From Macrostomum hystrix (lineage: Eukaryota > Animalia > Platyhelminthes), in NCBI GenBank assembly GCA_950097015.1, contig CATNEN010000001.1, positions 16,182,001 to 16,246,000 of the forward strand: DNA of 64,000 nucleotides, given 5' to 3'. A program made the position numbers and the translations under genes. A model generated the notes under the pieces. That model was given only the letters and a program-made list of their open reading frames with translations. It was not told where the DNA came from and did not search any database. Positions 20,352-40,211 of the stretch are shown here, one piece after another; within the stretch, counting starts at the first letter, position 1, and every line of letters begins with the position of its first letter.

Positions 20352-20794
20352 GTTGACTACAGAGGAAATGAGGATTTTGCGAATTAAGAGGGGGGGTTTT
20401 GTCGCTAAAGCAACACTGGGGATGAGAAAAAGTGAGCTAAACGGGGTGCTGCACACGGCAGTGGCCGCGGAGAATGAGCAATTGAAAAACCGGCCCTCGC
20501 GAACAGAGACTGCGATGCAGCGGCCGAGAAAGCGATAAAGGAAAAACTGGTAGGAGAGAAAAAAAGGCCCGGGGCCCTGGCTAGCTCTACTTCCAGCCTT
20601 GGCTTCCGACAACTGCTTGCGCGCACTCGAACTTGGGACATAGGAGTCTAGGTTTTAACTTAGCACTCATTCAGCAACCCTATAGCGGACTGTTACACTA
20701 TAGGTACGGCGGGGCCAGTACTACTGCTGGCAGCGCCTGCAGCAGCCTATCGCCCTACCTTGGAAAGTACACGACTTCAATAAGTTACTCAAAG

Positions 20795-21331
20795 AAGGCT
20801 AATCCCCGATTCGCTCAGAGGGCCCTTCCCGGGGGGGTGGCCGGGGGCTTCGCCTCTGCGATTTACAAGGCTGGGAAGTCCAGGTATTTTACACCTGGAG
20901 CCTCGCTTCGGCTTAGGAGTCCGTAGGGCAAAAGCCCGGTTACTGCGTTTAGACTACCCTTCAGAGAGCTTCTTAGAAAAGGACGTGCCGACCGATTTCT
21001 AGCCTATCCCCAAGGTCGGCAGTTTCAGGGCGCGGGCACGGGTGTCGTTAGACTCCCTCAGGGTCCCGACCCTTAACTATTCCGCCCCTAAGTTAGACTT
21101 AGTCAAAGTTACGTGGCACCTTCAGAATCAGGTACCTGAAAGCGGGCCTTGCGCGACGCCCAAGGAAAGGCTAATCCCCGATTCGCTCAGAGGGCCCTTC
21201 CCGGGGGGGGTGGCCGGGGGCTTCGCCTCTGCGATTTACAAGGCTGGGAAGTCCAGGTATTTTACACCTGGAGCCTCGCTTCAGCTTAGGAGTCCGTAGC
21301 TTAAGCCCGGTAACTGCGTTTAGACTACCCT
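20795..21331. repeat. ~165-bp direct repeat pair in the 5' leader (20795-20960 and 21167-21331)
   Basis: aaggctaatccccgattcg...tagactaccct occurs twice. Confidence 0.9.
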
Positions 21332-21685
21332 CGCCTAGAACAATCACGCAGGAAAAACCCCGCAGACAGTCCCCGACTCCTGCAGTAGCCACATAACCCG
21401 AAGACACTCTAGCATGAAGTCTACTCACACAGCCTACTCATAGTAGAAAGTCACTAATCAGAATTTTTAGAAACTCTAACAAAACCTTACATTAAAGTCC
21501 GAATCAAATTGAAACTGTTCAAAGAAAATTAATTGACAGTTACTCGGAACTGAAGTCCAGTCTCCCGAGATAAGATTCCGGCATACGGATAATGAAATCT
21601 AGAAGGAGCCCTTACGGCTAGCTACTACAGAAATCTGCAGCGCTACTAACAATTGAAATTCAAGTTCGTTTCGCGCCCTTTCTAG

Positions 21686-21705
21686 ATCCCACCTCGATGC
21701 CACCA
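21686..21705 (-). other. Primer binding site, tRNA-Leu-like
   Basis: TGGTGGCATCGAGGTGGGAT, 1 nt after the 5' LTR. Confidence 0.75.
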
Positions 21706-21706
21706 T

Positions 21707-24034
21707 TGATATAGCTGCGGGTTTGCAATCCGATGATCTGTCCTCGTGAAGGAAAGGAGTGTGGGGATGGCGATAGAGTCAGAAGTCGTACCGCAAAGTC
21801 TCGCGAGTTGCCGCGGAAAGAGGGATGAAGGGAGAGATGAAGGGAGAGACAGTGGATGCAGGGAGTGGTCCTCTCGGCCTCAGGCTGGCCAGTCCCACTC
21901 AAACCATAGGCCACAGGCATGACTGCCGTGCCTACCCCAAGCAGTGCTCGAAACCGGCTAAAAGTCTAAATAGATGTCGGACTACCCGCAAGCGGATAGG
22001 ACAGGGCTAGGTAGCCTACTGCCATCAGTAGCATGTTCGTAACTGACTCCTAAACTCGGTAGCAGTGGTCGACTCGGCCTAGGCTCTTGTCTTAGAAATG
22101 CGGAAAGGCTATCGGCAAAGCGGAAAATGATCTAGGGTAGCGCCACCACCCAATGCGCCTACGTTGCCACCGCAGACATTTGGGGACTTGGGTCCCCGGA
22201 GCTCGCAGCTCCTAGTTTGTCACACAGATCTTAGACAAGCCGAAAAATAGAGCCTTCTGTAACTTCCGTTTTAGACTAGGGTGAAAACCCCAGAATGGAT
22301 CGAGACACGCCTCACCAGGGGATTCCTGAATTTGCGCTACAGTGGTCTAGAAAGGTGGTACTCAGAACCTGAAAGAGAAACCCATAGCCAGAATCCTACT
22401 CATGGGACATCAGACACATTCTGTACATTAGGCTGCAGCCTACACATTAGATAACTAGCAATCCGAGTCTGTGTGAGTTGAGGAAAACAGAGGCAGGAGA
22501 GGTTAAGCTGAACACTGGCTGAGTGATTATGCAAGCGTGAGATTAATTGAACATCACTCTCGTTCCCGTGGCCGCAGGTGCGAAAGGGGGACAGCGGGAA
22601 AACTCCATTGGAAAGGGAGCTCGACACGTACCTTGAACCCACCCAAGAGGGAGAAGGAAAACCGGCCAAGGATTCCCCCAACCCCCTGGAAAGGAAAATG
22701 CACATGCTACCCTCCGCATTTACTTACAAATCCCTAGCTCCATATCCATACTCTCATGCGCGCTCACAGTTGTCTTCCTGCCGCAGCTTTCAGCTCGGCA
22801 TCACCAGAGCCCACCCCCTAATGAGTTAGCCACTCATGGTAGAGGGCTGTCTAATGAGAAAATAAAGAGGAAATAACAGCATGGCGGAAAAGATTTAAAT
22901 TGTTATTAAGTTTGGCCTAATGTTTTAATAATTGGCGAATGAATAGTCCGTATATTAAGCCTCGAATCCTAAGCCCGTGCCCACTAATAGCCGCCTAATT
23001 AACAGAAAGCCCCTTAGGAGCAATAATTGCAAAAACCACTGCGCGGGTTACTTAGCTGAAGTCGCTTCGGCTGCGTGCTGCAATCCCGTTGTTCTCGGGG
23101 AAGAGGATGGGGTAAGACAGCAAAGGCCGGGAAGGGAAAGGTGCGGCGAGTCGGCAGGGGCCAACACGCTTGGAGCTCAAGGCTCAATTTCAACGGCTCA
23201 CCTAAAGAGGTGGATCGCGCTCAGGGGGAATGGGGACAGGCAATGGGCCTGCGCTAACTGTGGAGCTATGAACTCTAGGGTCTATGCCCTAAGTGGGTCC
23301 GGAAAGGTGCTCTGGGTCCGGTGGGAGTCCGGCCCGGCAAAAGTAAGTCCGGCAGGGGAGAAGGGGAAGAGCCGGTGGGAGAAAAAGGTTGTAGAGGGAG
23401 CAGCGCCGCGCGCTTGCTTAAATAGGCCTTGCAGCACGCCAACCCCGACATCCATCAAAGCAACCCACATTCGCGCCCGCCTGTCAACGGGGAATCGAAG
23501 CGACGACAGGCCGCCCCAATTGCCCAATGAACCGGCGGCGGGAAACGACAGGTGCTCATCGAGAGCAGCCATCGGCAGACGGCCAACAATTGTTACTCCG
23601 CCGGGACAAAGGAAGCGCAGGCGCCGACCTGCCTACAGTGACATTTACAAGTATCTACAAGGGAGGAGGTCATAAAGTCGAGCTGGGCTCGAATACTGTA
23701 AAGAAGAGGGGACATGAAGAATTTAATGATCACTCATAACGCGCGAGTGAGCCCCTATATCTGATCGCGGTTTGGAGGGGAATTATGACCTAAACTAGTT
23801 CATACAGTAACATTATGGCCGCGATCAGTCATTCCTACGGGGAGTCTAGGCAACTCCGGAGAGAGAGGATTCGACAGCTACTTGATTCACCGCCGCCTCA
23901 AAACCCGGCCCTAAGATTAATGATCTTGTTTTGTGGCCAGCTGCTATGTGGGTCGCAATTATTAGTTACTTAAAAATTTGAAAAATTATGCTGGCTCACA
24001 TTCCCGCTCGATTCCCGCAGCACACTCCACATCA
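21707..24034 (-). repeat. 5' LTR (2328 bp)
   Basis: Near-identical to 13098-15421; minus-strand TATTTAAG at 23417-23424 is also kept in the divergent LTR near 63490. Confidence 0.95.
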
Positions 24035-24914
24035 CTCAGAAGTTCGAGCGTCATTAAACTGTTGCCGTACTGTTTAGTTTAGCGGCATAATCACTGCAAT
24101 ATAACTGTTCGGCGTGAGAAATAAATTCGAAAATAAGTTTTTACTAATTAATAGTCACAACAGGCATTTTGTACGAAAGAAAAACTCAAAGTGCCTTTAT
24201 CAGGTAAAGGCGGGCTCTTTTATTATTGCTCTTTTTGCTTTCCCATTTTTATTTCTGTAATTTACTGTTGGTCTGTTCAATTTCACTCTTCTTCAGTTGC
24301 TTTGCATTTAGTACCCTGAAGATATTTAATTCTACAAAACATTCCGGTTTGAGTGCAATCCAAATCCTATCCCAGGCCTATCCCATATGTATACAGATAC
24401 TTGGTGTTTACTTTTTTTCTCCCGCTATGCATCCTTTTACTATTTATACAGAAAATTAAACGTTCTTTGTGCGGCAATTAAGCAGCCACAGTCAGACAAA
24501 TTCTTTATACTGAACTGCGTTAGAAATTTATATTTATTTTCGTTGACTCTTACTTCTTTAATTTCGAAATTTAAACGTTATGCAGCAAAACATAATGCTG
24601 ACACAGCTAGTGCTTTCACCTACGATCGAATCTTTTGGGATCGTTTTCCTGAAGGCGGCTCATCTATGTCTACAATACTTAATAAGTTAATAATACTGAG
24701 CTGGCACAACTGAGCCAAAAAATCTTGTCAACTTGCGCATCAGAGGCCGCACTAAGTGCGCAGTTGCTGTTAGAATTTAAGAAATGAATCAGCGCCAAAA
24801 TTCATAATGCCGGTCGCCCTCACAATTGAGCGACCTGCTTTACGAGCGTAAATCGACGACTCTCCAAATCACTCCGCCATTATGTAAACACATTACCATA
24901 GAATCACATACCAC

Positions 24915-25117
24915 CATAATAATAATAATAATTGATTACACCTGCCCCAATTGGGCCAGATGTGCAGCCGACAGCACAGCTGCAGCTATGGCGCGGCGCA
25001 TCTGAAGGTTGCGTACAGCTGTTCAGTCCATGGACTGGCGGGACGCCACACCCACCTTTCAAGTATCCCAGCTGATGCTGGTACCCATTTAACAGCTGGT
25101 TGAACTGAAGCAATTCA
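24915..25117 (-). mobile_element. SINE 3' half, cut off by the satellite
   Basis: (taa)n tail and body match the 1575-1800 family; homology stops at gcaattcag. Confidence 0.8.
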
Positions 25118-27937
25118 GGGATCATTGTTAACTGGGGGATCATGATCAACTGGGGGATCTTTGTTAACTGGGGGATCATTGTCAACAGGGGAGGTACATT
25201 GTCAACTGTGGGATCATTGTCAAATGGGGGATCATTGTCAACTGGGTGATCATAATCAACTGAGTGATCATTGTCAACTTGTGGATCATTGTCAACTGGG
25301 AATCATTGTCAACTTGGGGATCATGGTCAACTGGGGGATCATCATCAACTGGGGGATACTTGTCAACTGGCTGATCATAATCAACTCAGTGATCATTGTC
25401 AACTGTGGGATCATTGTCAACTGTGGGATCATTGTCAACTGGAAGATCATTGTCAACTGGGTGATAATTGTCAACTGGGGAATCATCATCAACTGGGGGA
25501 TCATCATCAACTGAGTGATCATAATCAACTGAGTGATCATTGTCAACTGGGAATCATTGTCAACTGGGGGATCATTGTCAACTGGGTGATAATTGTCAAC
25601 TGGGGAATCATCATCAACTGGGGGATCATAATCAAATGGGGGATCATTGTCAACTGGGGGATCATTGTCAACTGTGGGATCATTGTCAACTGGGGGATAA
25701 TTGTCAACTGAGTGATCATAATCAACTGAGTGATCATTTTCAACTTGTGGATCATTGTCAACTGGGAATCTTTGTCAACTTGGGGATCATGGTCAACTGG
25801 GGGATCATCATCAACTGGGGGATCATCATCAACTGGGGGATCATCATCAACTGGGGGATCATCATCAAATGGGGGATCATTGTCAACTGGGTGATCATAA
25901 TCAACTGAGTGATCATTGTCAACTTGTGGATCATTGTCAACTGTGGGATCATTGTCAACTGGGGGATCATCATCAACTGGGGGATACTTGTCAACTGGCT
26001 GATCATAATCAACTCAGTGATCATAATCAACTGAGTGATCATTGTTAACTTGTGGATCATTGTCAACTGGGAATATTTGTCAACTTGGGGATCATGGTCA
26101 ACTGGGGGATCATTATCAAGTGGGTGATCATTGTCAACTGGCGGATCATGGTCAACTGGGGGATAATTGTCGACTGGGGGATAATTGTCAACTGGGGGAT
26201 CATCATCAACTGGGGGATCATCATCAACTGGGGGATCATTGTCAACTGGGTGATCATAATCAGCTGAGTGATCATAATCAACTGAGTGATCATTATCAAG
26301 TGGGTGATCATTGTCAACTGGCGGATCATGGTCAAGTGGGGGATAATTGTCGACTGGGGGATAATTGTCAACTGGGGGATCATTGTCAACTGGGTGATCA
26401 TTGTCAACTGAGTGATCATAATCAACTGACTGATCATTGTCAACTTGTGGATCATTGTCAACTGTGGGATCATTGTCAACTAGGGGATCATCATCAACTG
26501 GGGGATACTTGTCAACTGGCTGATCATAATCAACTCAGTGATCATAATCAACTGAGTGATCATTGTTAACTTGTGGATCATTGTCAACTGGGAATCTTTG
26601 TCAACTTGTGCATCATTGTCAACTGGGAATCATTGTCATTGTCAACTGTGGGATCATTGTCAACTGTGGGATCGTTGTCAACTGGAAGATCATTGTCAAC
26701 TGGGTGATAATTGTCAACTGGGGAATCATCATCAACTGGGGGATCATCATCAACTGAGTGATCATAATCAACTGAGTGATCATTGTCAACTGGGAATCAT
26801 TGTCAACTGGGGGATCATTGTCAACTGGGTGATAATTGTCAACTGGGGAATCATCATCAACTGGGGGATCATAATCAAATGGGGGATCATTGTCAACTGG
26901 GGGATCATTGTCAACTGTGGGATCATTGTCAACTGGGGGATAATTGTCAACTGAGTGATCATAATCAACTGAGTGATCATTTTCAACTTGTGGATCATTG
27001 TCAACTGGGAATCTTTGTCAACTTGGGGATCATGGTCAACTGGGGGATCATCATCAACTGGGGGATCATCATCAACTGGGGGATCATCATCAACTGGGGG
27101 ATCATCCTCAAATGGGGGATCATTGTCAACTGGGTGATCATAATCAACTGAGTGATCATTGTCAACTTGTGGATCATTGTCAACTGTGGGATCATTGTCA
27201 ACTGGGGGATCATCATCAACTGGGGGATACTTGTCAAGTGGCTGATCATAATCAACTCAGTGATCATAATCAACTGAGTGATCATTGTTAACTTGTGGAT
27301 CATCATCAACTGGGGGATCATCATCAACTGGGGGATCATTGTCAACTGGGTGATCATAATCAGCTGAGTGATCATAATCAACTGAGTGATCATTATCAAG
27401 TGGGTGATCATTGTCAACTGGCGGATCATGGTCAACTGGGGGATAATTGTCGACTGGGGGATAATTGTCAACTGGGTGATCATTGTCAACTGAGTGATCA
27501 TAATCAACTGACTGATCATTGTCAACTTGTGGATCATTGTCAACTGTGGGATCATTGTCAACTGGGGGATCATCATCAACTGGGGGATACTTGTCAACTG
27601 GCTGATCATAATCAACTCAGAGATCATAATCAACTGAGTGATCATTGTCAACTTGTGGATCATTGTCAACTGGGAATCATTGTCAACTTGGGGATCATGG
27701 TCAACTGGGGGATCATTTTCGACTGGGGGATAATTGTCAACTGGGGTTCATTGGTAACTGGGGGATCATTGTCAACTGTGGGATCATTGTCAACTGGGGG
27801 ATCATCATCAACTGGGGGATCATCATCAACTGGGGGATCATCATCAACTGGGGGATCATCATCAACTGGGGGATCATCATCAACTGGGGGATCATCATCA
27901 ACTGGGGGATCATCATCAACTGGGGGATCATCATCAA
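25118..27937. repeat. 18-bp satellite (GGGGGATCATTGTCAACT consensus) with ~1243-bp higher-order duplication
   Basis: About 155 monomers by length, with occasional 17-bp variants; variant order repeats at offset 1243 (25540 vs 26783, 25755 vs 26998). Confidence 0.95.
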
Positions 27938-28316
27938 ATTTATTTGACTCGAACTTATTAACCTGGAAAGTCACCTAGAAAAGTTTATCTTAACTCTGAC
28001 TATGTCAGTACTATATGGCTGTCGTCGGTGTCCCAATAGATTTGAGCACAGTTTATCGAGTCGGGTTCAATTGAAAATCAACCTAGAAATGATTTCCTAC
28101 ACGACTGAGTTGGTTTCATGATTTCAAATGATTTCCTCATGATGAAGGAAAGTTCATCTTCAAGCTCATCATGAAGTTTTCAAGCTTTTTTAAAACAACT
28201 TTAAGTCTATCTAAGTAAAATAGTCCCTGTTCATAAATTCCCCATTGCCCTTCTCCGAAACTTCGAAAGCCATGCAGGAACGCCGTGGCACATCGGGTGG
28301 GACTGATCGGGTAAGA

Positions 28317-28710
28317 AGCACAGACCAAATTAATAAGATAAGGCTTTCCTTCCGTCTGTGGTGGGGAGACCCACATGCATTACGTTCTAAATATTCTTAT
28401 CAGTTTTTATTTGAGCTGCTCCCTCCTCTTTTGGCTGTTCAAGTTCTGTGACTCACTTCAATTGGTTTTAGATCCCTAAAAGACTGGGGGCGCGAGTCAG
28501 TTCCGAACTTCCGCAGAACTCTGCCGCTAAAAATACTCTTTTATTTGTCTCGAAAAATTAAAATATGTACAGATTTGTACAGATATGTACAGTCTGTTAG
28601 GAAAAGATATTTGCTGAGTTATAAAACTATTAAATTATATTTACTTGCTTGATGATTCTGGAGCATCCTGTTTGCTTTATTACTTTATTATGCCAATGAG
28701 TACGAGTACA
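28317..28710. repeat. Diverged direct repeat of 30518-30772, flanking the SET gene
   Basis: Shared agcacagaccaaat...ataagataaggc, tctgtggtggggagacc and caatgagtacg blocks. Confidence 0.75.
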
Positions 28711-28891
28711 TTAAGCGATTAAAAAAATTAAGACACAAATTCCAAGAATCTTTTCAGAAAAGTAACCATTTTCTCAATGCGCCATTGCTTTATTTGTAAT
28801 AAAGAATATACATAATTAAACATGATTGTTACATGATTAAAGATTTAGCAAAATAAACTAAGCGACGAGTCATAATAACATGCGTGTCTTT

Positions 28892-30346
28892 CTAGTCTCG
28901 AAGCCATGGGTTCTTCACAAGATCATCATTATCGATACCTCTACCAGTCGTATAGTCGAACGTCAGTTCTGTGCCCGTTGCAACATATTTATTTGTCACG
29001 AAATAAATGACGGGTCGCAGCCCCTGGTCGATAATAATGAGCTTTGCTTTACAGTTAGGAGCAGTAGAAGAATGGTTCAGGTACCTTCCCAATCCGTCAC
29101 TGTTGCTGGCGTCAATTACCCATAATTTGCCGTTAACTTTAAACTCAAATAGCATCCAGTCGGAGTTAGGTTCACATTCGCGTCTAATCGCTTCCTGTTC
29201 GTTCAGCAGGATTCCGGCGAATTGATCGACAAACGCCCCCGCAGCTAGGTTGATTCTCGCAAAGGCGCCCAGTCCCTTCTCGCCCGCAGGTGCAACAGCG
29301 ATCGCGGTGTCTGTCTTCCCGTTGATGCCCAGTATGCGCTCGGTTGTATCTCTAGTGGATGTCGGGGGACGATAATCGACACTAGATCGGCTGAGCCTCT
29401 GAGCCGGCCTCTTCTTAACGGTCGGGTCAGGCAAAGGCTGTGCGGGGGTGTAGTTAAACACGATTTAATTTGTTTTTTTTTCATGCTTCTAAATCGCCCT
29501 TTTCTCCATCGCCTCTCTCACATTTCACTTGCTTGCTGACATCTCGTTTGCATCTCATCTCACTTAATCGGCCTCTACTTTTTACTCCCTCTTAATCCTC
29601 TCCTCTCTCATTAAGTTACTCAAAGAAAAACGATTACAGAAAAGGAAACTTTGCCCCAAAATCAGCTTTATACAGCCACACCATCTAACCGCACTCAATT
29701 GATTGACGAACCTCTAATGGACATACTGCTAGGGCGATTCGTAAAGATTGATCCACGCGTGAGTTGCCTTCGCCCTCTTCCTCGCTGTCGGAGAAGGATA
29801 ATTCGACGTTGACCTCAGGGACAGCGCGTTTGTTAGTCTGAAAAATTAAACATTTTTAATATTTTCTCATGCAGAAACATGAGAATGTGCATAACAGAAA
29901 TTAAGACGCGGGGCCTACATGCAAAGATTATAGTGGGAGATTATAGTTGCAGAGGGGAGTAGGAGAATACTTAGAAGGACAAGTTATTGAACAGGCAGGT
30001 AACATACATTATCATTCACCTGAAGTTCAGCCGTTGATGGAATTGCGCAAGAATGTCGCTTGAATCGGACTATAAGTCCCGGGCCAGTTTCGCAGGTCAC
30101 CCTGACCTGATCAGCGCGTTGGGAAGTCTGGCAATGTATGCGTGCAATACGTGAGTGTACAATAGAAATATAACAAAAGAATAAAGGAAAAGTTGTAAAC
30201 TTTTTACAATCTCAAATAATTTGCTGCCTCTGAATTCTCACCTCATTGAGGGCGGTCGATACGCGCTTTAAACGAATTTTTAAACCGGGCACTGCTGTGT
30301 CTGCACTTCCGCAGTCAGATATTAGCCACTGATCACTTATATCCAT
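28892..30346 (-). CDS. SETD8/PR-Set7 (KMT5A)-like SET-domain protein, predicted 289 aa; join(30346-30242,30127-30020,29837-29727,29437-28892)
   Basis: GEKGLG, GRYLNHS, ELTFDY and C-terminal NPWL motifs; three upstream stop-free phase-0 exons with GT/AG; minus-strand AATAAA near 28790. Confidence 0.85.
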
Positions 30347-31163
30347 GAAATATTAAATACTTTTGTGATGAAAATAAATCGCAAAATAATTTCCTGTGTA
30401 GTGTGTAATGACTCTGAACGGGTTTGGGTGGGACCGATCAAGCGGGGTGGGGAGGGGAGCACACAGACTTTTTATTTCTAGAAGTTTCTAGAAGTTGTTA
30501 TTTCTAGAAGTCTCTGGGAGCACAGACCAAATGGATAAGATAAGGCCGGCTTTCCTTCTGTCTGTGGTGGGGAGACCAGTCATCAGTTTATCAGTTTTTT
30601 TTAGCTGCTCCTTCCTCTTTTGGCCGTGCAAGTCCTGTGACCATGCAGAAGAGCTCTACTAGCTAGATGTTTACCGTTTCTAGCAGTCACTTCAATTAAT
30701 GGGAATTAAGTGATTCTGGAAGCATGCTTGTTGCTAAAACACTAAGCTTCTAAGTCAATGAGTACGCGTACAATAAAAGCAATTACGAAGATAATGACAC
30801 GCTTTCGAATGCCTTATAAAATTAAATTCGATTTAAGAATTTCGTAAAAATGTGCGAAAGAACAAAGTTTTGGCATTAAAGTGTCAACGCGTTCTTCAGG
30901 CAACGGACGGCAAGAAAAATGGACTCCTGTTATCGGAGACCACACACCGCCTCAAATAAACCTTATCGCTTATCATTCCCGATTCCCGGTATTTATTTTG
31001 CTATTCGGACTTTGCTGCTCAATATCAGTATACAGTTTACAGGGATACAGGGAGTATACAGTTTTTTACATTTGTACATTTTTATGTCTGTAGTCAAATT
31101 GATGCAAAACATTAACAGTCAAAATTACATTTGCTGACAAGGGTGGAACAGAATGCGATTCCA

Positions 31164-33919
31164 CTAATCAACACCAGAGAGAGGAATCACCAGCCATGCC
31201 TTTCCGGTCTTGCGCGGGAACAGAAAGCACTTCCTGTGGGGAGTGCCAGTAACAAAAGATCGTGTTTTACAATAGACTCCGATACCCAGTTTTGAGGACG
31301 GATATGGATAGTCATACAAGTCCTTTTGCAGCGACAGAATATTGCCAGTTACTTGGTCACCAAGAACAGAAGTAATCCGAACAACTGAGCCATTCACGAT
31401 GCAACAGTTGTCGGGCATCTTAACAGAGTACTTAATGGGCTTAATTGGGTTGCTGACTAGTAAGTCGCGAAGTGAAAGCATTTGATTTAGCAAGTAAGAT
31501 GATACAAAGCGCGTTACTCGAAGGCGACCCTTTAAGTGAGAGAGGTAGTTCTCATATGGAAAGGCCGAAAAGTTGGACACATTTCCACGTTGCCTCGCGT
31601 ATTGAAACAAGTGCAAAAGAACGTGAGCATTGTGAGTCATGAAACTGTTGCCGTACAGTTGAGCTGCGTCATACACAAAAAGTTTCAAGGCAGATTCAGC
31701 GGCATCAAGAAGTTCAGGCTGTGGGCTATCAGAGCAAAGAACATAACAGGCAAAGTGAAATAGAAGAAAATGCCTGTACAACTCTGTTGGCAGAAATTTG
31801 CGAAAAAAATACGGGCCCACATACAGAGTCCACGTGCGGAACTCGCTGGCTTTGAAATGTCCGAGTTCTCGGTCGATTCTCCGAGGGCGTCTTTGGAAAT
31901 TTGTCGGTGTATATATAGCACGTGATTCGGCAAAATCAGAAAGTGCGGAAACTTGATCCGGCCTAATTTTGCGCCGCCGTCCGTCATCCACCGCAAAGAG
32001 GAAGGTGAAAAGACGCCTAGCGACGCCTAGAAAGAGCAGGTGCATTGGCTCCGGTGGGCAAGCATCAGGTAGTTGCAAGCCTGGCAGTGACAGGAGCGGA
32101 CTTGGTTCATGCCGCTGGTTGGATTCCCTGCAGTAGTTGTTGGCGATAAAGACTAGTAATAATAATAATTTATTACACCTGCCCCAATCGACAGCACAGC
32201 CGCAGCTAATGCGCGGCGCATCTGAAGGCTGCGTACGGCTGTTCAGTCCATGGACTGGGAGGACGCCATACACCCACCTTCAATTACCCCAGCTAATGCT
32301 GGTACCTATTTAACAGCTGGGTGAACCGAAGCACTGCAGAGTTAAGTGTCTTGCTAAAGGACACAAATTTTTTCAGTGGAGTCGGGAATCGAGCTATTGT
32401 ATATTATTGTATATTGAATATTGTATATTTTATATTGTATATAGCAAGTATGTGAATAATTTTTTAGATTTAAAAGGACAGCCATTATATAGACAGTCTG
32501 AATCGGAATCACATTTCTTTAGTTGCCATATCCCGATACAGCCATTTGCATATTTATATGATTAACTGATTCACGTATTAAGACAACGTCAGGTCAGGTT
32601 CGTAGACATGTATAAAACATGTCAGATATCCTGCCATGTAGGCATATACAGATGTATAAGCTGGTATACAAAATTCGCAAAAGCACACACACATACACAC
32701 AACCCCATGCACACACACGCACCTATTAAACCGGTAATCCTCAGCTGTGCGACACTCTCCGACTTCGACAGGGTAGACTATTCGCCGGTCGACCGTCTGG
32801 GCTACCACTCTGCAGTAGGGGCAGCCGTGATGTGCGTTGTGGCCCAAAGTTGCGGTAATGAAGGTCCGCGCTGGCGTGTCGCAAATGAACGTGATGTTCC
32901 TGATGTGGATTAGCACCCCATCAACTTCGACAAAGTCGGTCATGAAGGACTGCAGCTCATTGATGAAGTCGGCCAGGTACTCGGTAAGAGGTGGTTTACC
33001 CAACCCAGCATACACAGCAACAGGAAGTGGGCGACAGAATCTCGAAAACTTAACGATAATAGGCCATGCCGCGTAGCTTGACGAATTGTAAATCGGCATT
33101 CCGTCAATGCCAACATCAATGTCCAGTTCCAACCTTGCTCTGTCATTCTGGGTGGCTTCCGGATTTCCAAGATCCAACATGCCGCCGCGAATCAGGAACG
33201 CCAGGTTCGAAGCAATACCGATGTAGGAAAAGTGTCCACTACCCATGGTGTACTTTTGTATTTGTACTGCTTCAGCCGAAGGTTCTTTGCGCAGACGGTG
33301 CACTGTTCTTGCGACCGGCAGGCCTCGGCAGACTAGAGCATTGAGCAGGAACTGCATCGCTCGATGTGAGATGTTGTAACGAACGAAGAATATTAGAAGC
33401 TCCTCATTCAGGCTCTCCAATGATGGCTTTGCTGTTTGGCCTGGGTCCCCATCTTCCGCATCTGTTGACAAGTGATCGGCGTAGTCGAACTCATCAGCCT
33501 CACTTTCGTCGAAAGCCTCGTTAATAGCTGATAAATGCATGGGGTCACAGGCATTGACACCGGCACTGGTAGAATCAGGCCGCGAATCCTCAGGTGGAAT
33601 GAGGCTTGCGCCATCTGCATGGGAAGATGCAACCTCCTGATTGAAAATAAAGAGGAAAAAAAGAAGACGATGAAACTGTGCATAAAATTCGAGGCAATCA
33701 ATCAAACCTATCACCCTGTCAATCCTGCCTCTGTCTGCCCCACACTCGTCAAATTTCTTTACAAAATTGCATGAAACTTAAATAGAATCTCAATAAGAAT
33801 TGAAAACTCACTTGGTCCATTACTACATCACTGTCCGCAAAGTCAAGTAGGTTCTTTGTGAACCAATTTTGAAACTTTCATCGTGGGTTCGTGTCACCTT
33901 TAGTCCGTCTTTTAGACAT
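31164..33919 (-). CDS. EnSpm/CACTA-type transposase, ~661 codons; join(33919-33812,33636-32723,32127-31164); in-frame TGA at codon 14
   Basis: GIDGMP...WPI, ICDTPAR...GHN...GCPYC, EPMHLLFLGV, FKASEFRTW, HNAHVLLHL and SAFPYENY motifs; intron phases 0 and 2 are consistent. Confidence 0.88.
32157..32395 (-). mobile_element. SINE in transposase intron 2
   Basis: Same family as 1575-1800, with B-box remnant and (taa)n tail. Confidence 0.8.
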
Positions 33920-34054
33920 TTTGTGAGTAAGTGATGGATATGAAAGGCTAATAGATGGGATATATTGAAAAAATTGCTGTAAATTAACCCGGGAAAATAA
34001 TATTACTAGAGCCTAGAGGTCTGTAAATTACAATTCATTAGTTTACTAAAATTG

Positions 34055-34285
34055 CTAGTTTACTTGCCTTTGTCGAGACTCGAGTCGAGTTGGCTCTCAG
34101 CTCGGCTCGGCTCGGCTCGCTCTTGGCTCGGATTGGCTCTGTCGGATTCCGCGCGGCGCGGGCAAGTTTTCATTGGCTTGTGTCCAATAAAGCTTTGAGA
34201 AGGCGGGGACCCACCTGTGGCATATCTGCACGTATGGCTCATATATAAATAGATGATCAATCGTTGTTGAGCAATTTTATAGTTG
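34055..34285 (+). promoter_or_regulatory. Promoter cassette, copy 1 (between divergent transposase and ORF 34353)
   Basis: attgg boxes, aggcgggg GC box, tatataaa at 34242; duplicated at 39939-40145. Confidence 0.65.
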
Positions 34286-34352
34286 CAACTTCTCCCACCA
34301 GATCACTAAAATTCCCTCAACTAACTTCCTTCAACCTTCCTTCAACAAAAAA

Positions 34353-34805
34353 ATGAATAGCAACAGCAGCGACAGCAACAGCATCAACAGCAGCCAATGC
34401 CATGTCCATGGCCTGGATGTTCATGACGATGTCAATGAGTTCAAATTTCATTTGTTCCCGGCACAGTTCCGGGCGAACTTTCTGGCCAATGCCACCACCA
34501 AACTGGATGAGGCCATCCAGTCATGCCTCGTCGCTGCGGAAGAGATGGCGGCGACAGTGGCCTGGACGCCCGCACGGCGCCGGGCACAGGACGCGCTGAA
34601 TGAAGCGACGCGTCTTATGAAGCTGGCCATGATTCGGATGGCCAGAGCTCGCCGCATAGCGGCGGGCCTGGACCCATATGTGAGTAGTCGCTTTTGAATA
34701 TTATTATTATTAGAATATTTATTAACGCATCTGATCTGATAACCGAGCTAATAAGCTAAATGAAACTGAAACCCATCTTTTATATCGCAGCCGGGCGTCC
34801 TGTGA
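34353..34805 (+). CDS. Orphan ~113-aa helical protein; join(34353-34679,34791-34805)
   Basis: aaaaATG context after a TATA box, GC-rich ORF, donor GTGAGT at 34680 and acceptor tcgcag at 34790. The unspliced ORF ends at 34697. Confidence 0.6.
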
Positions 34806-34891
34806 ATCGCTGCAGGGCAGCAGATCGGCCGGCTGACCGGGACCGGCTGACCAATTTAAGTGGCGATAATTGCACTTATTGACAATAATAA

Positions 34892-37800
34892 TGTCAAGAC
34901 TCAAAGGAAGCTTCTTATAGCGAATATAACGAGTGTATTTGGGTTAAAGCCGCGCGTGCGAATAAGCCGTGTAGTCACTCTTACGTTTAGCTTGGGGGGG
35001 GTAAAAGGGGTGCAACAGTTGAGGCGAAGCTTAGCTTAACGGGACCATAGACAGAAGAAGAAGAGAGAAAGCCGTTAGGGCCGGGCTGCTTTGACACTGC
35101 ACAACATGTCTCCCTCCAGTCAAATGAAACAAAACAACGAGCGCATGTGGCTATTTTTTGTGGCTATGTTAGTCTTATCGGGAGGGCAACATATCAACCG
35201 TCACAGTGTCAGGGTGTGTATCGGTCTGGCTGTCGCCGATTTCGGTCACCCCTGCGCGGAACTTGATCTGCCACCGGAGCCGGTGGTGTCGGGGTTTCAT
35301 TGGGAGGCATGTCTGCCGGCGGCTCGACTTTCGTCCTCGTCGTCCTCAGAAGTGCGTGAGAGCATCGGGGCAATCTGATTGTTGCTTGCCAGACGCAGTT
35401 TGTCGTCCGTCAGCAACCAGGATGTGTTGCGCCCTTGGGTCATGAGGAACTCTGCGCCTCGGGACGGGGTGTGGTCGGTGGCCTTGTATACGACCTGGTC
35501 ACCTTGTTGGAAAGCCGAGACAACAGGTACGCGAAGTCGTCGACCGAACACGAGCTCAGCCGGTGTCTTTGACCTTGCACCTGACGAGTTGCGGTGGTGA
35601 AGCAGAACCTTCTGCAAAAACGCAATGAAGTCAGAGTGGGTCAGTCTCTGTGTCCAGGCCTGCAGGGCCCTCTTGACAGTTTGGACTGCTCGCTCGGCCG
35701 CACCATTAGATTGTGGCGAGTAGGGAGGGGTTTCCATCTTTCGGGCGCCGTTGGCATGCAGCCAGGACAGCAGGGCATCAGACGTGAATTCCGGTCCGTT
35801 GTCGGAGACCACCACCTCTGGGACTCCAAATCTCGTGAATACAGTACGTAACGAGCAAATAACCCTGTCTGCCGTCCTGTCGCGGGATGGAAAGGCTTCA
35901 ATCCATCCGGAATAGGAATCCACTACAATGAGAATGTTGCCCACCTCGGGCACGAAGGCCCAGTCCATGTGGATGCGCTGAAATGGAGCATCAGCAGGTG
36001 GCCAAGCATCTCGGGACTTCTGCAGTCGGGGCCGCATGCAGCACACTGCCGCACGAATCGTTCCACGTCGCGCTGCATGCCGGGCCACCAGCAGGACAGC
36101 TCCAGGAGGTGGTAGCTGGCAGAAGTACCGCTATGAGTGTCGTGAATCGCATCGAAGGCCTCTTTCCGGAGACGCGGAGGTATGAATGCGCGCCGGTGCA
36201 TGTAGAGGAGGCCGTTCTCGATTGTTAGAGCTGCTGCGTTTCTCTTGAAAGCGGCCTCTGCTTGTGTGCAGTTATGCCAGTCGCCATTGCGTACGCGACG
36301 TATGATGCGCTGTAGCAGTGGATCAGAATCAAGTTCGCTAGCGATCCGTCGAGGATTGATAGTAGGGGATTCAAAGGCAACTGAGTTGATTGCCTCGAAT
36401 GCGTCGGCCGGGTCTTGACTGTCATTATCAAACGGCAGACGAGAAAGCGCATCGGCATGCGGAATGCGCGATCCGGGAACGTAGACCACGCTAAAGTCAA
36501 ATTGCATCAGGTAAAGGGCCCAGCGACTGATTCTTGCCGATGAACTCATTGGTATGCTGCCACCGAAAAGCCGTAGAAGAGGCTGATGATCCGTCTGTAC
36601 CGTAAATCGTCGGCCTTGGAGGTAGTGTTTCAGGCGACAGACGGCCCAGAAGATGGCGAGTGCTTCCCGTTCAATGTTGGAATAGTTAGTCTCGGCCTTG
36701 GACAGTGTCCTAGAGATAAAGATTACAGGGCGTCCTTCCTGGGTAACAACGCCTGCCAACGCTCCTTTAGAGGCATCTGTTGTGAGGGTCACCTCCTTCT
36801 CCAGGCTGTACGGTTGTACTATTGGTCGTGATGAGATCTCCTTCTTGAGATTCTCGAAAGCGCGAGCACATGCTTCAGACCAGACAAACGGCGTGGATGC
36901 CTTGCGCAGTTCGTTCAATGGGGCGACCTTGGCGGAATAGTCAGGAATCAAGCGGCCGAAGAAATTCACCAGACCGAGAAATTGCTCGATCTCCTTCTTG
37001 GTCTTCGGTGTCGAGATGTGGCGAACTTTGTCCACGAGCTTATCATCGGGCCGAATTCCAGCGGCAGAAATTTCGAATCCAAGGAATGAAATCGAATCGC
37101 AAATGCCTGTACATTTGTCTTCATTGACCGTTACCTTTTTTTCGGCCAGGCGCGTTTTGACTGCTTTCAGACGCTTCTGGAGTGCTTCAACGTTCTCAGC
37201 ATAGACCATGATGTCGTCTTGATAGATCAGTAGTCCCTTCAAGTCGGAGAGGATGCTCTCCATTGTGCGTTGAAAAATGAATGAAGCGTTTTTCATGCCC
37301 ATCTGAAGGCGTTTGACGCGGTATAGGCCTCGCGAGGTATTGATGATAGAGATGCCTTGGGCGGATTCGTCCAGCTCGATCTGCCAGTAAGCCGACCTCA
37401 GATCAATCTTGGCAAACTTCTTGGCATTCTTTAACTTGCCAAAGAGGTGCTCGATGCTTGGAATAGGGTATGACTCTGGCTTTATTTTGTCGTTCACATG
37501 GACCTTGTAATCGGCGCACATGCGCAACGTCCCGTCCTTCTTCTTGATCCAGACGACCGGAGAAGCGTTGCTCACAGGACCCTCCACAGGCTCGATGATG
37601 CCAAGCTGCTGCAGCCGGTCCAACTCTGCGTTGACTTGCTTCTCTAGTGCGATTGGAACCGGACGAGCACGGCAGAACTGGGATCGAGCGCCTTCAACCA
37701 GCTCCATCTGTGCCTTGATGCCCTTGATGGTGGGCAGCGTTGTAGCTGCAACTGTGGGGCTCGGAGCTTGAGAGTTGGTGTGAAAGAGAGAGTCGGAATC

Positions 37801-39193
37801 TAAAAGATCACGGCCAAGGAGGCCGAACGGCTTCAAAGACGAAACCACGACGAATTCGGCGGGGTGTAACCTACCCCGCATCTCGACGGTAGAGCACAGC
37901 TTGCCGAGAGTCTTTAGGGTGTGGCCGTCGTAGGCCTCGAGGCGTCGGTGACTCTTTTGCAGTGGGGGCCTGCCCAGAGACTCCCAGATTGTGCTAGAAA
38001 GCACGGAGACGGATGCACCGGTATCCACTTGCATTGGTACCTTGGCGCCGTCTACAAGAAGTGTCTCAGATGCAACTTCGATTGCGTTGACCAGATCAAC
38101 GTCCATAAGATGCAGGATCTTCGAGGGCTCGGGCGTCATCGATGCATCGGATGGAACATCCGCGTGATGTACGGATTTGCTAGTCAGAGCAGAGCGGCAT
38201 ACGGCAGCAAAGTGGTTGCGCTTGGAGCACTTGGAACAGGTCTTGCCATATGCCGGGCACTTGCCTGCGTGATGGGATCCGCCACAGTACTTGCAGCCCT
38301 CGATGCGCTGACCATTGGAAGTTGGCCGTCCACCTTTGGAGTAGTGCACCGATTCGTCAGTGGCCGCATTATGTTGGGCTGGCGGCGACAATGGGCCAGC
38401 CGGGCCTACCGGGGGCAACGAGTTACAGGTTTGAACAAACGTGTTGATCTGTTCACAACTTCGAATGAGGTCAACAATCTCCGAGATTGTCTGATCCTTG
38501 GTTTGCATTGCACCGAGAATGCGCCGTTGATGCTCAGGGTTGTACAGTCCAGAAATGAGAGTAAGCCGCACCAGCTCCTCTGCGGGACTGGCGCAGTCCT
38601 TCAGAGAGTCAAAGGCGCAGTGCGTTGCTGCTTTCCTCAGGCGAGCTAAATAGTCTGCTATCGGCTCAGCAGCTTTCTGACGAATTGAGAAAAAGTCGGT
38701 TCTTTCGGCGACAATGAGGCGCTTCTGAGGTTGTAAGTAGGACACCAGGGCTGTCTCGATCTCTTGGAAGGTCAGCTTGTCGATCTCCTTCGGAGCGACG
38801 AGATGAGTCAGCTTCTCCAAAGCAGGCAGTCCGCAGGATGCCAAAAAATTGTCTGCGACTTGTCGGGATTCGGTCGAGTCGGTCCACTTCTTGGCGCGGG
38901 CCAGAGCATTGAAGGCCTTGAGCCACATCAGTGCACGGTCGGCATCGCCGAGAAAAAGGTCACCAAGCCGCGACGCCATTGTCAAGACTCAAAGGAAGCT
39001 TCTTATAGCGAATATAACGAGTGTATTTGAGTTAAAGCCGCGCGTGCGAATAAGCCGTGTAGTCACTCTTACGTTTAGCTTGGGGGGGTAAAAGGGGTGC
39101 AACAGTTGAGGCGAAGCTTAGCTTAACGGGACCATAGACAGAAGAAGAAGAGAGAAAGCCGTTAGGGCCGGGCTGCTTTGACACTGCACAACA
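34892..39193 (-). mobile_element. Compact Ty3/gypsy LTR retrotransposon, Mag-like
   Basis: LTRs 34892-35106 and 38980-39193 (2 differences seen), imperfect 5-bp TSD aataa/attaa, PPT ggagggag, PBS TGGCGTCGCG. Confidence 0.92.
35297..38979 (-). pseudogene. gag-pol: Single-ORF gag-pol, frameshifted near 36030 in the integrase zinc-binding region
   Basis: Two CCHC knuckles, VDTGA protease, YQDD RT, TDAS RNaseH; integrase core (HMDW, SDNG, AER) continues in another frame. Confidence 0.9.
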
Positions 39194-39938: not shown

Positions 39939-40145
39939 CTAGTTTGCCTTTGTCGAGTCAGCCGTTCGAGCCGTTCGCTATTGGCTCAGCTCGCTCTAAC
40001 CGGATTGGCTCTGTCGGATTCCGCGCTTTTGCATTGGCTCTTGTCCAGTAAAGCTTTGAGAAGGCGGGGTCCCAACGGAGCATATCTGCACGTACGTAGC
40101 TCGTATATGAATAGTTGATCAATCTTTGTTGAGCAACTTTATAGT
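39939..40145 (+). promoter_or_regulatory. Promoter cassette, copy 2
   Basis: Homologous to 34055-34285; ends about 70 bp upstream of ATG 40212. Confidence 0.65.
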
Positions 40146-40211
40146 CTCTAGAAAATTTCTAGCTACTTAGTCACTCAAATTCTTATATTGAAGCTATTAT
40201 AAAAGCTTAAA

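What the first reader, a model, noticed from the sequence alone, without database searches (positions are those of the whole stretch)
28892..29437. Transposon-borne SETD8-like methyltransferase with Phe at both product-specificity tyrosines
Seen: the last exon aligns by eye to human SETD8 (GEKGLG vs DGKGRG, IRRE vs KKRE, GRYLNHS vs GRLINHS, NPWLRD vs HPWLKH). FVDQFAG puts Phe at the Y245 position (FVVEYHG), and ELTFDY puts Phe at the Y334 position (ELLYDY). Known: Y334 is the Phe/Tyr switch and Y334F turns SETD8 from a mono- into a dimethyltransferase; Y245 hydrogen-bonds the substrate lysine. Inference: the element carries a retuned enzyme that may write higher methyl states or target another substrate. 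The Y245 change could instead make it weak or inactive.
Basis: partly seen in the sequence, partly recalled or inferred. Interest (0 to 1): 0.85.

Follow-up and report, generated by a model that had tools for sequence, protein, structure and literature searches.

The report
Transposon-carried SET8-like enzyme, double-Phe site
A large cut-and-paste transposon of a Macrostomum-like flatworm carries an expressed, conserved gene for a SET8-like lysine methyltransferase in which both tyrosines lining the lysine pocket are phenylalanine, a rare natural state that in engineered enzymes favours trimethylation.

Summary
Window 28892-29437 (minus strand) is the last exon of a four-exon gene of about 294 aa. 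It encodes a SET domain (Pfam E 1e-12) whose predicted fold is closest to human SET8/KMT5A (TM 0.81-0.85). HMMER places FVDQF on FVVEY(245) and ELTF on ELLY(334).

Both Phe are kept in all 13 intact copies of two subfamilies. Their dN/dS is 0.18-0.25 at dS of about 0.5. Spliced contigs in two public runs confirm introns 2 and 3.

The gene is transposon cargo. It lies 1.7 kb behind a DUF4218/Transposase_21-type transposase in 8 of 9 copies, inside an element with about 30-nt inverted ends at 5066 and 53174. The element is about 24 kb without three nested retroelements.

- Phe at the switch is common, seen in 64 of about 170 related domains.
- The rare feature is Phe at the 245 site, seen in 1 of about 160 related domains and derived in this lineage.

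The double-Phe state equals G9a Y1067F, GLP Y1124F and EZH2 Y641F, which favour trimethylation. An active higher-order methylase is therefore the likeliest reading, but it is untested and the substrate is unknown.

This scan had already reported the same transposon family with SET and ETS cargo on another copy (s1-849027).

The parts
28892..29437 (-). Exon 4 (last exon, 181 codons plus TAG stop): nSET helix, SET domain, C-flank PWL helix
   Evidence: ORF; Pfam SET; SETD8 alignment; acceptor confirmed by spliced contigs; fold match
29219..29221 (-). TTC codon, Phe73 of the exon-4 peptide, at the SET8 Tyr245 site (FVDQF)
   Evidence: TTC in all 13 intact copies
28958..28960 (-). TTC codon, Phe160 of the exon-4 peptide, at the SET8 Tyr334 Phe/Tyr-switch site (ELTFDY)
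29712..29837 (-). Exon 3 (42 codons, acidic SDSEEEGE stretch)
   Evidence: Both borders confirmed by spliced contigs; 72-77% conserved in subfamily B
30020..30127 (-). Exon 2 (36 codons, GLIVRFKR motif)
   Evidence: Donor side confirmed by the joint 29837|30020; acceptor read by eye; not found in subfamily B
30242..30346 (-). Exon 1 with ATG (35 codons, LKIRLKR motif)
   Evidence: Read by eye with a GT donor; 71% conserved, with ATG and motif, in subfamily B; no read support
28789..28794 (-). AATAAA signal about 100 nt after the stop codon
   Evidence: Read from the sequence; inference
32578..33714 (-). Transposase, N-terminal/catalytic open frame (coding part probably ends at 32723)
   Evidence: ORF; language-model neighbours Transposase_21/Plavaka; 38% identical to the intact 646-aa transposase of subfamily B, which has more than 300 relatives
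31164..32273 (-). Transposase, C-terminal open frame (coding part probably starts at 32127; the intron 32722..32128 holds a SINE-like insert)
   Evidence: ORF; DUF4218 E 3e-4, below the cut-off; tblastn; splice sites read by eye against the family consensus
25118..27931 (.). 18-bp tandem array, 156 copies, inside the element downstream of the SET gene; present in all A copies
11457..11705 (-). ETS DNA-binding domain, a second cargo gene (one in-frame TAG in this copy)
   Evidence: PF00178 match at C1:16193457-16193705, 64.6 bits; open ETS frames lie downstream of SET in other A and B copies
5066..5095 (+). Left terminal inverted repeat, CCCGGTGTAAAAGTCATCGTCCGCCGGACG
   Evidence: 0.00 matches expected by chance
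53145..53174 (-). Right terminal inverted repeat (the 5' end of the element as transcribed), CCCGGTGTAAAAAACATCGTCCGGCGGACA
   Evidence: the copy in L032 begins at the same CCCGGTG with a different flank; subterminal GTCCGCCGGAC motifs
5066..53174 (-). The whole transposon copy: 48.1 kb, about 24 kb without the nested insertions 13098-24034, 34873-39187 and 43679-52700. A 1.56-kb foreign segment at 41905-43463 replaces 1.9 kb of the element

Best explanation
The stretch is the catalytic last exon of a small, separately transcribed accessory gene of four exons and about 294 aa. The gene belongs to a roughly 23-24-kb CACTA-like DNA transposon of a Macrostomum-type flatworm. It lies 1.7 kb downstream of the transposase on the same strand and upstream of an 18-bp repeat array and an ETS gene. 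The protein has the SET8/KMT5A architecture: an N-flank helix, the SET knot and a C-flank PWL helix, with no zinc-cluster pre- or post-SET domains. Its cofactor and catalytic motifs are intact (GxG, NHS, ELxFDY with the catalytic Tyr). Neither of the two tyrosines that hydrogen-bond the substrate lysine amine in SET8 is present; both are Phe. Shown here: gene structure, expression as spliced RNA-like contigs, transposon linkage, purifying selection, and the rarity and derived state of Phe at the 245 site. Inferred: the enzyme is active, and its lysine channel, lacking both hydroxyls and the water they hold, lets the methylated amine rotate. It would then proceed to di- or trimethyl-lysine and might be comparatively slow on the unmethylated lysine. 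That is how the double-Phe mutants G9a Y1067F, GLP Y1124F and EZH2 Y641F behave. The substrate is unknown. H4K20 is only the default guess from the fold, and the substrate-binding strand differs from true KMT5A. The benefit to the element is speculative; it may mark its own or host chromatin.
For: Domain and register. Fold: AlphaFold model with pLDDT 79.7; the 15 best Foldseek matches are nearly all SET8 chains, with target TM 0.81-0.85 among the top ten and rmsd 2.0 A over 159 columns for the best match. Gene model: spliced joints 29437|29712 and 29837|30020 with GT..AG in two runs from two studies; exons 1 and 3 conserved in subfamily B. Selection: 13 intact copies; dN/dS of A against B is 0.18-0.25 at dS 0.42-0.55. 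Both Phe codons are TTC in all copies while neighbouring codons carry synonymous changes. Rarity: at the 245 site, 157 of about 160 aligned domains from the top 150 hits of 1.84 billion representatives have Tyr and 1 has Phe; at the switch, 89 have Tyr and 64 Phe. Derived state: the nearest relatives (own_L021 and P0003; clade support 97) are Tyr/Phe. Transposon: SET lies behind the A-type transposase in 8 of 9 copies and behind three B-type copies; inverted termini; copies on contigs C1, C5 and C14. Precedent: G9a Y1067F and GLP Y1124F become trimethyltransferases (PMC3356298); EZH2 Y641F gains efficiency on me2 (PMC3914023). That G9a Y1067 and EZH2 Y641 sit in the same EY motif as SET8 Y245 is established knowledge, not tested here.
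Against: No enzymatic or structural test of this protein exists. Yeast Set1 Y967F, the same site but with Tyr at the switch, keeps about 50% me1 yet loses me2 and me3 (PMC3585878), so the effect depends on context. As I recall, SET8 Y245F itself is a poor enzyme; I could not read that paper. The substrate-binding I-SET strand (DWMLFEF against GCYMYYF) and Gln for the near-invariant Glu before the Phe in subfamily A differ from KMT5A. One run is only guessed to be RNA and the other is of unknown kind. The window's copy of the element is itself damaged by three nested insertions, a replaced 5' segment and a stop in ETS. Some B-type transposase copies have no SET gene nearby.
Confidence: 0.6

Rival explanations
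1. Pseudo-enzyme: loss of the Tyr245-type hydroxyl cripples catalysis, and the conserved protein works as a SAM- or histone-tail-binding module, for instance a decoy or an adaptor brought to chromatin by its basic N-terminal motifs.
For: Tyr at this site is almost universal, 157 of about 160 domains. Set1 Y967F loses most me2 and me3. dN/dS below 1 does not separate binding from catalysis. Conserved LKIRLKR-type motifs in the N-terminal exons would suit a tethering role.
Against: All other catalytic and cofactor motifs are intact and conserved (GxG, NHS, catalytic Tyr). Set1 Y967F and Y1054F still methylate. With Phe at the switch, the same change makes G9a/GLP trimethylases and speeds EZH2 on me2.
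Confidence: 0.2
2. An ordinary SET8-type enzyme: the two Phe make no practical difference, and it mono- or dimethylates H4K20 like its Tyr/Phe paralogues.
For: The best structural matches are SET8. The C-flank PWL helix is kept. Phe at the switch is common in this group.
Against: The 245-site change is rare and derived. Every published mutant at this site changes rate or product state. The I-SET strand differs from KMT5A orthologues. The genome has a much better KMT5A candidate elsewhere, 43% against 36% identity to a trematode KMT5A.
Confidence: 0.12
3. Not functional cargo: a captured host gene fragment, or a host gene lying next to a transposase by chance and copied by segmental duplication, drifting neutrally.
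For: The A copies sit in a repeat-rich part of one contig and share long flanks. A target-site duplication is not firmly shown: only TA/TA in this copy. About 8 of 20 copies are broken.
Against: The gene lies inside inverted termini. Gene order is the same behind two transposase lineages only 38-40% identical. Copies lie on three contigs. dN/dS is about 0.2 over dS about 0.5. It is a complete four-exon gene with its own ATG and spliced products.
Confidence: 0.04

Closest known systems
Human KMT5A (SETD8 / PR-Set7), H4K20 monomethyltransferase
   Same: Same domain layout (nSET helix, SET, C-flank helix ending in PWL, no zinc clusters). Best structural match, with target TM 0.81-0.85 among the top ten and rmsd 2.0 A for the best match. 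25-28% identity, with GxG, NHS and ELxxDY motifs aligned.
   Different: KMT5A has Tyr at 245 and 334 and stops at monomethyl; this protein has Phe at both. The I-SET substrate strand differs. It is not the orthologue, since the genome has a closer KMT5A candidate at C1:7.77 Mb. It is multi-copy and transposon-borne.
Double-Phe active sites made by mutation: G9a Y1067F, GLP Y1124F, EZH2 Y641F
   Same: The same pair of positions is occupied by Phe/Phe: the EY-motif Tyr is lost and Phe sits at the switch.
   Different: Those are laboratory or tumour mutants of H3K9 and H3K27 enzymes with other flanking domains and partners. Here the state is natural, fixed and conserved in a SET8-type scaffold. 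The equivalence of positions rests on known motif alignment, not on a test made here.
SET genes carried by other transposons: HarbingerS, oomycete MuDR, Helitron captures, red-alga Plavaka accessory gene PAG2
   Same: A DNA transposon carries a SET-domain gene as an accessory gene (PMC12730594; bioRxiv 10.1101/2025.02.11.637652). Plavaka belongs to the same broad CACTA-like group.
   Different: Those have different hosts (oomycetes, algae and others), different transposases (PIF/Harbinger, MuDR, Helitron) or a different cargo design (PAG2 joins a DNA methylase to SET). None is reported with a SET8-type fold or a double-Phe site. No SET gene was found on any of 80 metagenome contigs carrying related transposases, 25 of which have at least 3 kb of downstream sequence.
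KDZ-transposon zinc-finger-SET genes of the same genome (scan notes s1-840479, s1-253534, s1-408106)
   Same: SET8-like, with Phe at the switch and a C-terminal PWL; multi-copy. L027-L030 are identical on four contigs and preceded by a zinc-finger open frame.
   Different: Only 34% identical. Tyr is kept at the 245 site (FVCFYGG). They have a zinc-finger N-terminus and, according to those notes, a different transposase group.
SETMAR (primate SET-mariner fusion)
   Same: A SET domain and a transposase are linked in one locus.
   Different: SETMAR is a host SET gene that captured a transposase and is fixed as a single copy. Here a mobile element carries the SET gene as a separate gene.

Membership tests
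SET-domain lysine methyltransferases (PF00856) | Profile match above the curated cut-off | tested here: met
   48.9 bits against a cut-off of 22.4, E 9.8e-13
SET-domain lysine methyltransferases (PF00856) | Cofactor and catalytic motifs: GxG, (R)xxNHS, ELxxDY with the catalytic Tyr | tested here: met
   EKGLG, RYLNHS, ELTFDY; N121 and Y162 invariant, H122 nearly so, in a 71-sequence alignment
SET-domain lysine methyltransferases (PF00856) | Methyl transfer from SAM to lysine | not testable with these tools
   Needs a biochemical assay
KMT5A / SET8 / PR-Set7 subfamily | nSET helix plus SET plus C-flank helix ending in PWL, without pre- or post-SET zinc clusters | tested here: met
   Alignment to residue 180 including NPWLR; model helices 28-39 and 170-180; the top Foldseek hits are SET8
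KMT5A / SET8 / PR-Set7 subfamily | Tyr at both lysine-channel positions (245 and 334), the basis of monomethylase behaviour | tested here: not met
   Phe at both; KMT5A orthologues from flatworms, a mite and a copepod, and a set-1-like wasp protein, have Tyr/Tyr
KMT5A / SET8 / PR-Set7 subfamily | Orthology to KMT5A | tested here: not met
   The genome holds a closer candidate (C1:7767641-7768375, 43% identity, E 6e-52, against 36% and E 8e-13 for this gene). The tree puts this gene in its own clade with own_L021 and P0003, and deeper nodes are unresolved
KMT5A / SET8 / PR-Set7 subfamily | Specificity for histone H4 Lys20 | not testable with these tools
   The I-SET strand differs.
Transposon accessory (cargo) gene | Lies between the element's terminal inverted repeats | tested here: met
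   TIRs at 5066-5095 and 53145-53174, 26 of 30 matching, 0.00 expected by chance; the gene is at 28892-30346
Transposon accessory (cargo) gene | Constant linkage to the transposase across copies | tested here: met
   8 of 9 A-type copies with a gap of 1.74-1.77 kb on the same strand; 3 B-type copies with gaps of 2.2-3.5 kb
Transposon accessory (cargo) gene | Target-site duplication or empty sites proving insertion | tested here: inconclusive
   Only TA/TA flanks this copy. The other end of other copies could not be fetched
CACTA / EnSpm / Plavaka-type transposons (Transposase_21, DUF4218) | Transposase of that family | tested here: inconclusive
   DUF4218 scores 21 bits, below the cut-off of 27. 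There is no Pfam hit for the intact B-type protein. Language-model neighbours carry Transposase_21 or Plavaka, and many relatives carry PF13960 or PF16064
CACTA / EnSpm / Plavaka-type transposons (Transposase_21, DUF4218) | Termini beginning CACTA with a 3-bp duplication | tested here: not met
   The termini begin CCCGGTG, and a 3-bp duplication is absent in this copy. Subterminal repeated motifs, typical of the group, are present
HarbingerS | PIF/Harbinger transposase alongside the SET gene | tested here: not met
   The transposase relatives are DUF4218/DUF4806 proteins, not PIF/Harbinger

The most novel reading that the evidence does not exclude
A metazoan DNA transposon encodes a natural counterpart of the oncogenic EZH2 Y641F active site on a SET8 scaffold. 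This would be a dedicated higher-order (me2 to me3) lysine methyltransferase that builds on marks first laid by host enzymes. Basic LKIRLKR-type N-terminal motifs and the co-carried ETS factor would bring it to chromatin, letting the element write a chromatin state on itself or on host loci. The cargo module would also move between transposase lineages.
Probability: 0.18. Interest if true: 0.8.

Novelty: new variant of a known kind. Interest (0 to 1): 0.55.

Why it matters
Transposon-carried chromatin writers are known only from a handful of mostly non-animal cases, and none has been characterised biochemically. This case is an expressed, selectively maintained gene in an animal from a genus that includes a laboratory model flatworm. 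Nature has fixed in it the double-Phe lysine channel that is otherwise known from engineered G9a/GLP and tumour EZH2 mutants. It offers a direct test of the Phe/Tyr rules in a natural enzyme. It also offers a way to ask whether a mobile element manipulates histone methylation for its own benefit. The mismatch between transposase divergence (38-40% identity) and cargo divergence (81% for SET, about 99% DNA identity in the ETS-bearing region) shows that cargo modules are exchanged between transposon lineages.

Tried and rejected
- The word-indexed protein search with exon 4 found nothing at E<=1e-5. The index-free search then showed the nearest outside protein is only 43% identical.
- I first took window 41904 as the element's 5' end, because four copies stop matching the window there. 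That was wrong: the window copy has a 1.56-kb foreign segment there, and the other copies run on.
- I first took the long repeats on both sides to be a 6.5-kb host macro-satellite. They are the 3' regions (ETS part) of this and neighbouring element copies.
- No inverted repeat was found between L032 1-4200 and the 1.8 kb after the 3' segment in L043, because the true 3' end lies 8 kb further on.
- Related transposases on 80 metagenome contigs carry no SET gene.
- Reading SET8 Y245F kinetics in Couture et al. 2005 and 2008 failed because the papers are not held.
- The bacterial promoter scan is irrelevant to a eukaryote, and a self-comparison added nothing.
As a result the far ends of other copies, the host KMT5A candidate and a histone H4 gene could not be read, and no complex prediction was sent.
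- Only exon-by-exon references were used.
Full report
**What is at the coordinates.**
On the minus strand, 28892..29461 is an open frame of 189 aa. It matches Pfam SET well above the curated cut-off, with E 9.8e-13 and 48.9 against 22.4 bits. Against all PDB sequences the best matches are the KMT2D SET domain (E 3e-12) and human SETD8/KMT5A (E 9e-11). Only the SETD8 alignments run on through the C-terminal helix to NPWLR/HPWLK.

HMMER places fvdqFag on fvveYhg and eltFdy on ellYdy. PDB happens to hold both single mutants of SETD8. Their sequences differ at exactly these two columns: 3f9z reads fvveFhg and 3f9w reads ellFdy. Their entry titles name them SET8-Y245F and SET8-Y334F. This fixes the register without relying on memory.

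**Gene structure and expression.**
Just upstream of 29437 the minus strand reads cacag|CCT. Further upstream I read three short exons by eye, all phase 0 with GT..AG borders: 30346..30242 (starting with ATG), 30127..30020 and 29837..29712.

Laying Logan contigs of two public runs from two studies on 28700-30500 gave contigs that join 29437 to 29712 and 29837 to 30020. Both joints skip stretches bounded by GT..AG on the minus strand. Introns 2 and 3 are therefore confirmed, and the gene gives spliced products. One caveat applies: one run is only guessed to be RNA and the other is of unknown kind.

Exon 1 rests on its conservation in a diverged subfamily, at 71% identity with the ATG and the LKIRLKR motif kept. 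The total is about 294 aa. An AATAAA lies about 100 nt after the stop.

**Fold.**
I built a 71-row alignment from in-genome copies plus hits of the index-free search. From it AlphaFold2 gave a model with mean pLDDT 79.7, above 90 over most of the SET core. Foldseek against PDB returned almost only SET8 chains among its first 15 matches. The top ten have target TM 0.78-0.85, and the best match has rmsd 2.0 A over 159 columns, the whole SET8 catalytic domain. MLL, SETD2 and EZH2 come lower.

**Copies, selection and the two Phe.**
The genome is 220 Mb in 42 contigs, and the window is C1:16182001-16246000. It holds 43 six-frame matches to exon 4.
- Seven copies are 98-100% identical (subfamily A).
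- About eight copies are about 81% identical (subfamily B).
- More distant SET8-like paralogues are 44%, 42% and 34% identical.

Thirteen A and B copies have an intact exon 4; the others carry stops, frameshifts or deletions. Nei-Gojobori dN/dS between A and B is 0.18-0.25 at dS 0.42-0.55, and 0.18-0.41 within B. Both Phe are TTC in every intact copy, while neighbouring codons show synonymous differences. Neutral decay is therefore excluded.

The distant paralogues all have Phe at the switch but Tyr at the 245 site: FVAEYQR, YVCEYAG and FVCFYGG.

**How unusual this is.**
An index-free HMMER search of 1.84 billion representatives gave 2271 hits. The closest single-domain protein is only 43% identical. 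I scored about 170 SET domains from the best 150 hits in the query's register.

| Site | Tyr | Phe | Cys |
|---|---|---|---|
| 245 site | 157 | 1 | 1 |
| Switch (334 site) | 89 | 64 | 5 |

The single Phe at the 245 site belongs to a fish protein with Tyr at the switch. At the switch, 11 further domains carry Trp, Ile, Val or Leu. No other domain in the sample is Phe/Phe.

A maximum-likelihood tree places A and B together (support 99). They group next with paralogue own_L021 (84) and then with P0003 (97), and both of those are Tyr/Phe. Deeper nodes are unresolved. The switch Phe is thus ordinary and ancestral in this group. The derived, rare event is Tyr to Phe at the 245 site in the ancestor of A and B.

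**The gene is not the host KMT5A.**
A trematode KMT5A (P0089, named by its source) finds a far better candidate at C1:7767641-7768375, with 43% identity and E 6e-52. This gene reaches only 36% and E 8e-13.

Compared with KMT5A orthologues, the clade also differs in the substrate-binding I-SET strand, PW(L/M)LF(E/N)F against G(C/S)YM(Y/F)YF.

**Is it transposon-borne?**
The evidence is as follows.
- **Transposase.** Two open frames upstream on the same strand (32578-33714 and 31164-32273) encode a transposase. The evidence is a weak DUF4218 match and language-model neighbours carrying Transposase_21 or Plavaka. They are also 38% identical to an intact 646-aa frame next to a subfamily-B copy (L040 7867-9807). 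That protein has more than 300 relatives annotated as transposase-domain, DUF4218 or DUF4806 proteins across animals. The best is 73% identical and comes from Macrostomum lignano, which indicates the kind of organism.
- **Transposase intron.** The two A-type frames are separated by what reads as a 595-bp phase-2 intron (32722..32128) containing a SINE-like insert. I read this by eye against the family consensus.
- **Linkage.** Genome-wide, 8 of 9 A-type transposase copies have the SET exon 1.74-1.77 kb downstream on the same strand. Three B-type copies have it 2.2-3.5 kb downstream. Other B-type copies have none nearby.
- **Termini.** My first attempts to find the ends failed (see Tried and rejected). 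Its start coincides with the point where my copy L032 stops matching other copies.
- **Test of that lead.** The 20 nt at that end (window 53175-53156, minus strand) recur once in the window, inverted, at 5065-5084. That is where a 23-kb element should end once nested insertions are subtracted, and 0.00 matches are expected by chance. The aligned termini read CCCGGTGTAAAA..CATCGTCCG.CGGAC and match at 26 of 30 positions. L032 starts at the same CCCGGTG with a different flank. A subterminal motif, GTCCGCCGGAC, is enriched, with 10 hits against 0.47 expected.
- **Second cargo gene.** An ETS domain lies at window 11457-11705 on the same strand, with one TAG in this copy. Open ETS frames follow the SET gene in other A and B copies.

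The element in the window is therefore 5066-53174, or 48.1 kb. It is inflated by three nested insertions:
- an LTR element at 13098-24034;
- a gypsy-type fragment at 34873-39187, with RT, RNase H and integrase domains;
- an LTR retrotransposon at 43679-52700, with LTRs 99.8% identical.

A 1.56-kb replacement lies at 41905-43463. Without the nested insertions the element is about 24 kb. A target-site duplication is not established: only TA flanks both ends here. The termini do not begin with CACTA, so assignment to the CACTA group rests on the transposase only.

**Mosaic history.**
A and B transposases share 38-40% identity at the protein level. The SET proteins share 81%, with dS about 0.5 and introns no longer alignable. 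The ETS-bearing 3' region next to a B copy (L039) is 98.8% identical at the DNA level to the window. These three levels cannot reflect one divergence time. Cargo modules must have been exchanged between transposon lineages.

On 80 metagenome contigs with related transposases, 25 of which have at least 3 kb downstream, no SET domain was found. The cargo is therefore lineage-specific.

**What the double Phe probably does.**
From the literature read here:
- The switch Tyr of SET8 (Y334) and SET7/9 (Y305) limits them to monomethylation, and Y to F makes them dimethylases (PMC3356298).
- The other tyrosine hydrogen-bonds the methyl-accepting nitrogen. In G9a and GLP, which already have Phe at the switch, Y1067F and Y1124F create trimethyltransferases (PMC3356298).
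- In EZH2, also Phe at the switch, Y641F and other Y641 changes raise efficiency on H3K27me2 at the expense of the first steps (PMC3914023).
- In yeast Set1, with Tyr at the switch, Y967F keeps about half of me1 but loses me2 and me3 (PMC3585878).

G9a Y1067 and EZH2 Y641 occupy the EY motif equivalent to SET8 Y245. This is established knowledge of the motif (FICEY-VGE, FISEY-CGE), and I checked it only for consistency of numbering from memory.

The natural Phe/Phe state here equals the G9a, GLP and EZH2 mutant state. With all other catalytic motifs intact and under purifying selection, the likeliest reading is an active enzyme biased to higher methyl states. I put this at about 0.6. A catalytically weak binding protein gets about 0.2, and an enzyme of unchanged behaviour about 0.1. 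The substrate is open.

**Comparison with what is known, and novelty.**
SET genes on transposons are already described: HarbingerS and oomycete MuDR (cited in PMC12730594), and Helitron captures and a Plavaka accessory gene in a red alga (bioRxiv 10.1101/2025.02.11.637652). This scan has also already reported SET8-like cargo on CACTA-like and KDZ elements of this same genome. The kind is therefore known.

What is new here:
- the natural, conserved double-Phe lysine channel on a SET8 scaffold;
- its derived origin within the transposon lineage;
- read-level support for the gene model;
- the evidence for module exchange between transposon lineages.

I rate it a new variant of a known kind, of moderate interest.

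**Limits.**
- No histone sequence was available for a complex prediction, so none was sent.
- The joined protein was not used.

Noticed in passing
window 30242-30346 and 30020-30127 (minus strand): The two N-terminal exons each carry a basic alternating motif (PGLKIRLKR, PGLIVRFKR). The first is conserved in subfamily B (SLKIRLKR). Another first-stage note (s1-848227) reads them as BET ET-domain-binding-like motifs. I only checked conservation.
   Followed up: partly
window 11457-11705 and 60273-60521 (minus strand): ETS DNA-binding domains (PF00178, 64.6 bits), each with one in-frame TAG in the window. Open ETS frames of about 106 aa lie downstream of the SET gene in many A and B copies, so ETS is a second cargo gene of the family.
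   Followed up: partly
A-type against B-type element copies (L040, L039, L037 against the window): The parts show three levels of divergence: transposase 38-40% aa identity, SET 81% aa, and the ETS-bearing 3' region of one B copy (L039) 98.8% DNA identity to the window. The elements are mosaics that exchange cargo and 3' modules.
   Followed up: partly
window 25118-27931: An 18-bp minisatellite (GGGATCATTGTCAACTGG, 156 copies, 82% matches) lies inside the element between the SET and ETS genes. It is present in all A copies with variable length and produces long spurious open frames on both strands.
   Followed up: partly
window 32154-32375 and 24917-25118: A SINE-like element of about 200 bp sits inside the putative transposase intron and again next to the minisatellite. 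It is present in all A copies, so it was in the founder.
   Followed up: no
window 43679-52700: An LTR retrotransposon with 643-bp LTRs 99.8% identical and long open frames (1743 aa) is inserted in the 5' region of the element. A short overlap in the copy L032 (1679-1683) suggests a 5-bp duplication.
   Followed up: partly
window 41905-43463: A 1.56-kb segment found nowhere else among the loci, with two minus-strand open frames (42099-42758 and 42731-43279), replaces about 1.9 kb of the element's 5' region in this copy.
   Followed up: no
window 4647-5065 and 54024-54469: The 420 bp just outside the left inverted repeat are 91% alike at two neighbouring element copies. This points to a shared preferred target, a duplicated block, or a true end lying further out.
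   Followed up: no
L027-L030 (C1:3466462, C7:10984254, C25:9646083, C26:1257810): A different SET8-like gene (34% identical, Tyr/Phe, PWLQ end) is 100% identical on four contigs and is preceded by a C2H2-like zinc-finger open frame. It fits the KDZ zinc-finger-SET family of earlier scan notes. P0003, the nearest outside relative of my gene, also begins with such a zinc finger.
   Followed up: partly
G000 C39, C1, C3, C5, C7, C9, C11, C14, C38: Ten copies of a 29%-related transposase frame (open frame of 685 aa) give identical scores and lie on nine contigs. This looks like a very recently active sister family without a SET gene nearby.
   Followed up: no
P0027 and cluster members (Metynnis hypsauchen, fish): This is the only other domain in the sample with Phe at the 245 site (FVLEFRG, Tyr at the switch). 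It belongs to a five-member cluster of multi-copy hypothetical proteins in one fish genome.
   Followed up: no
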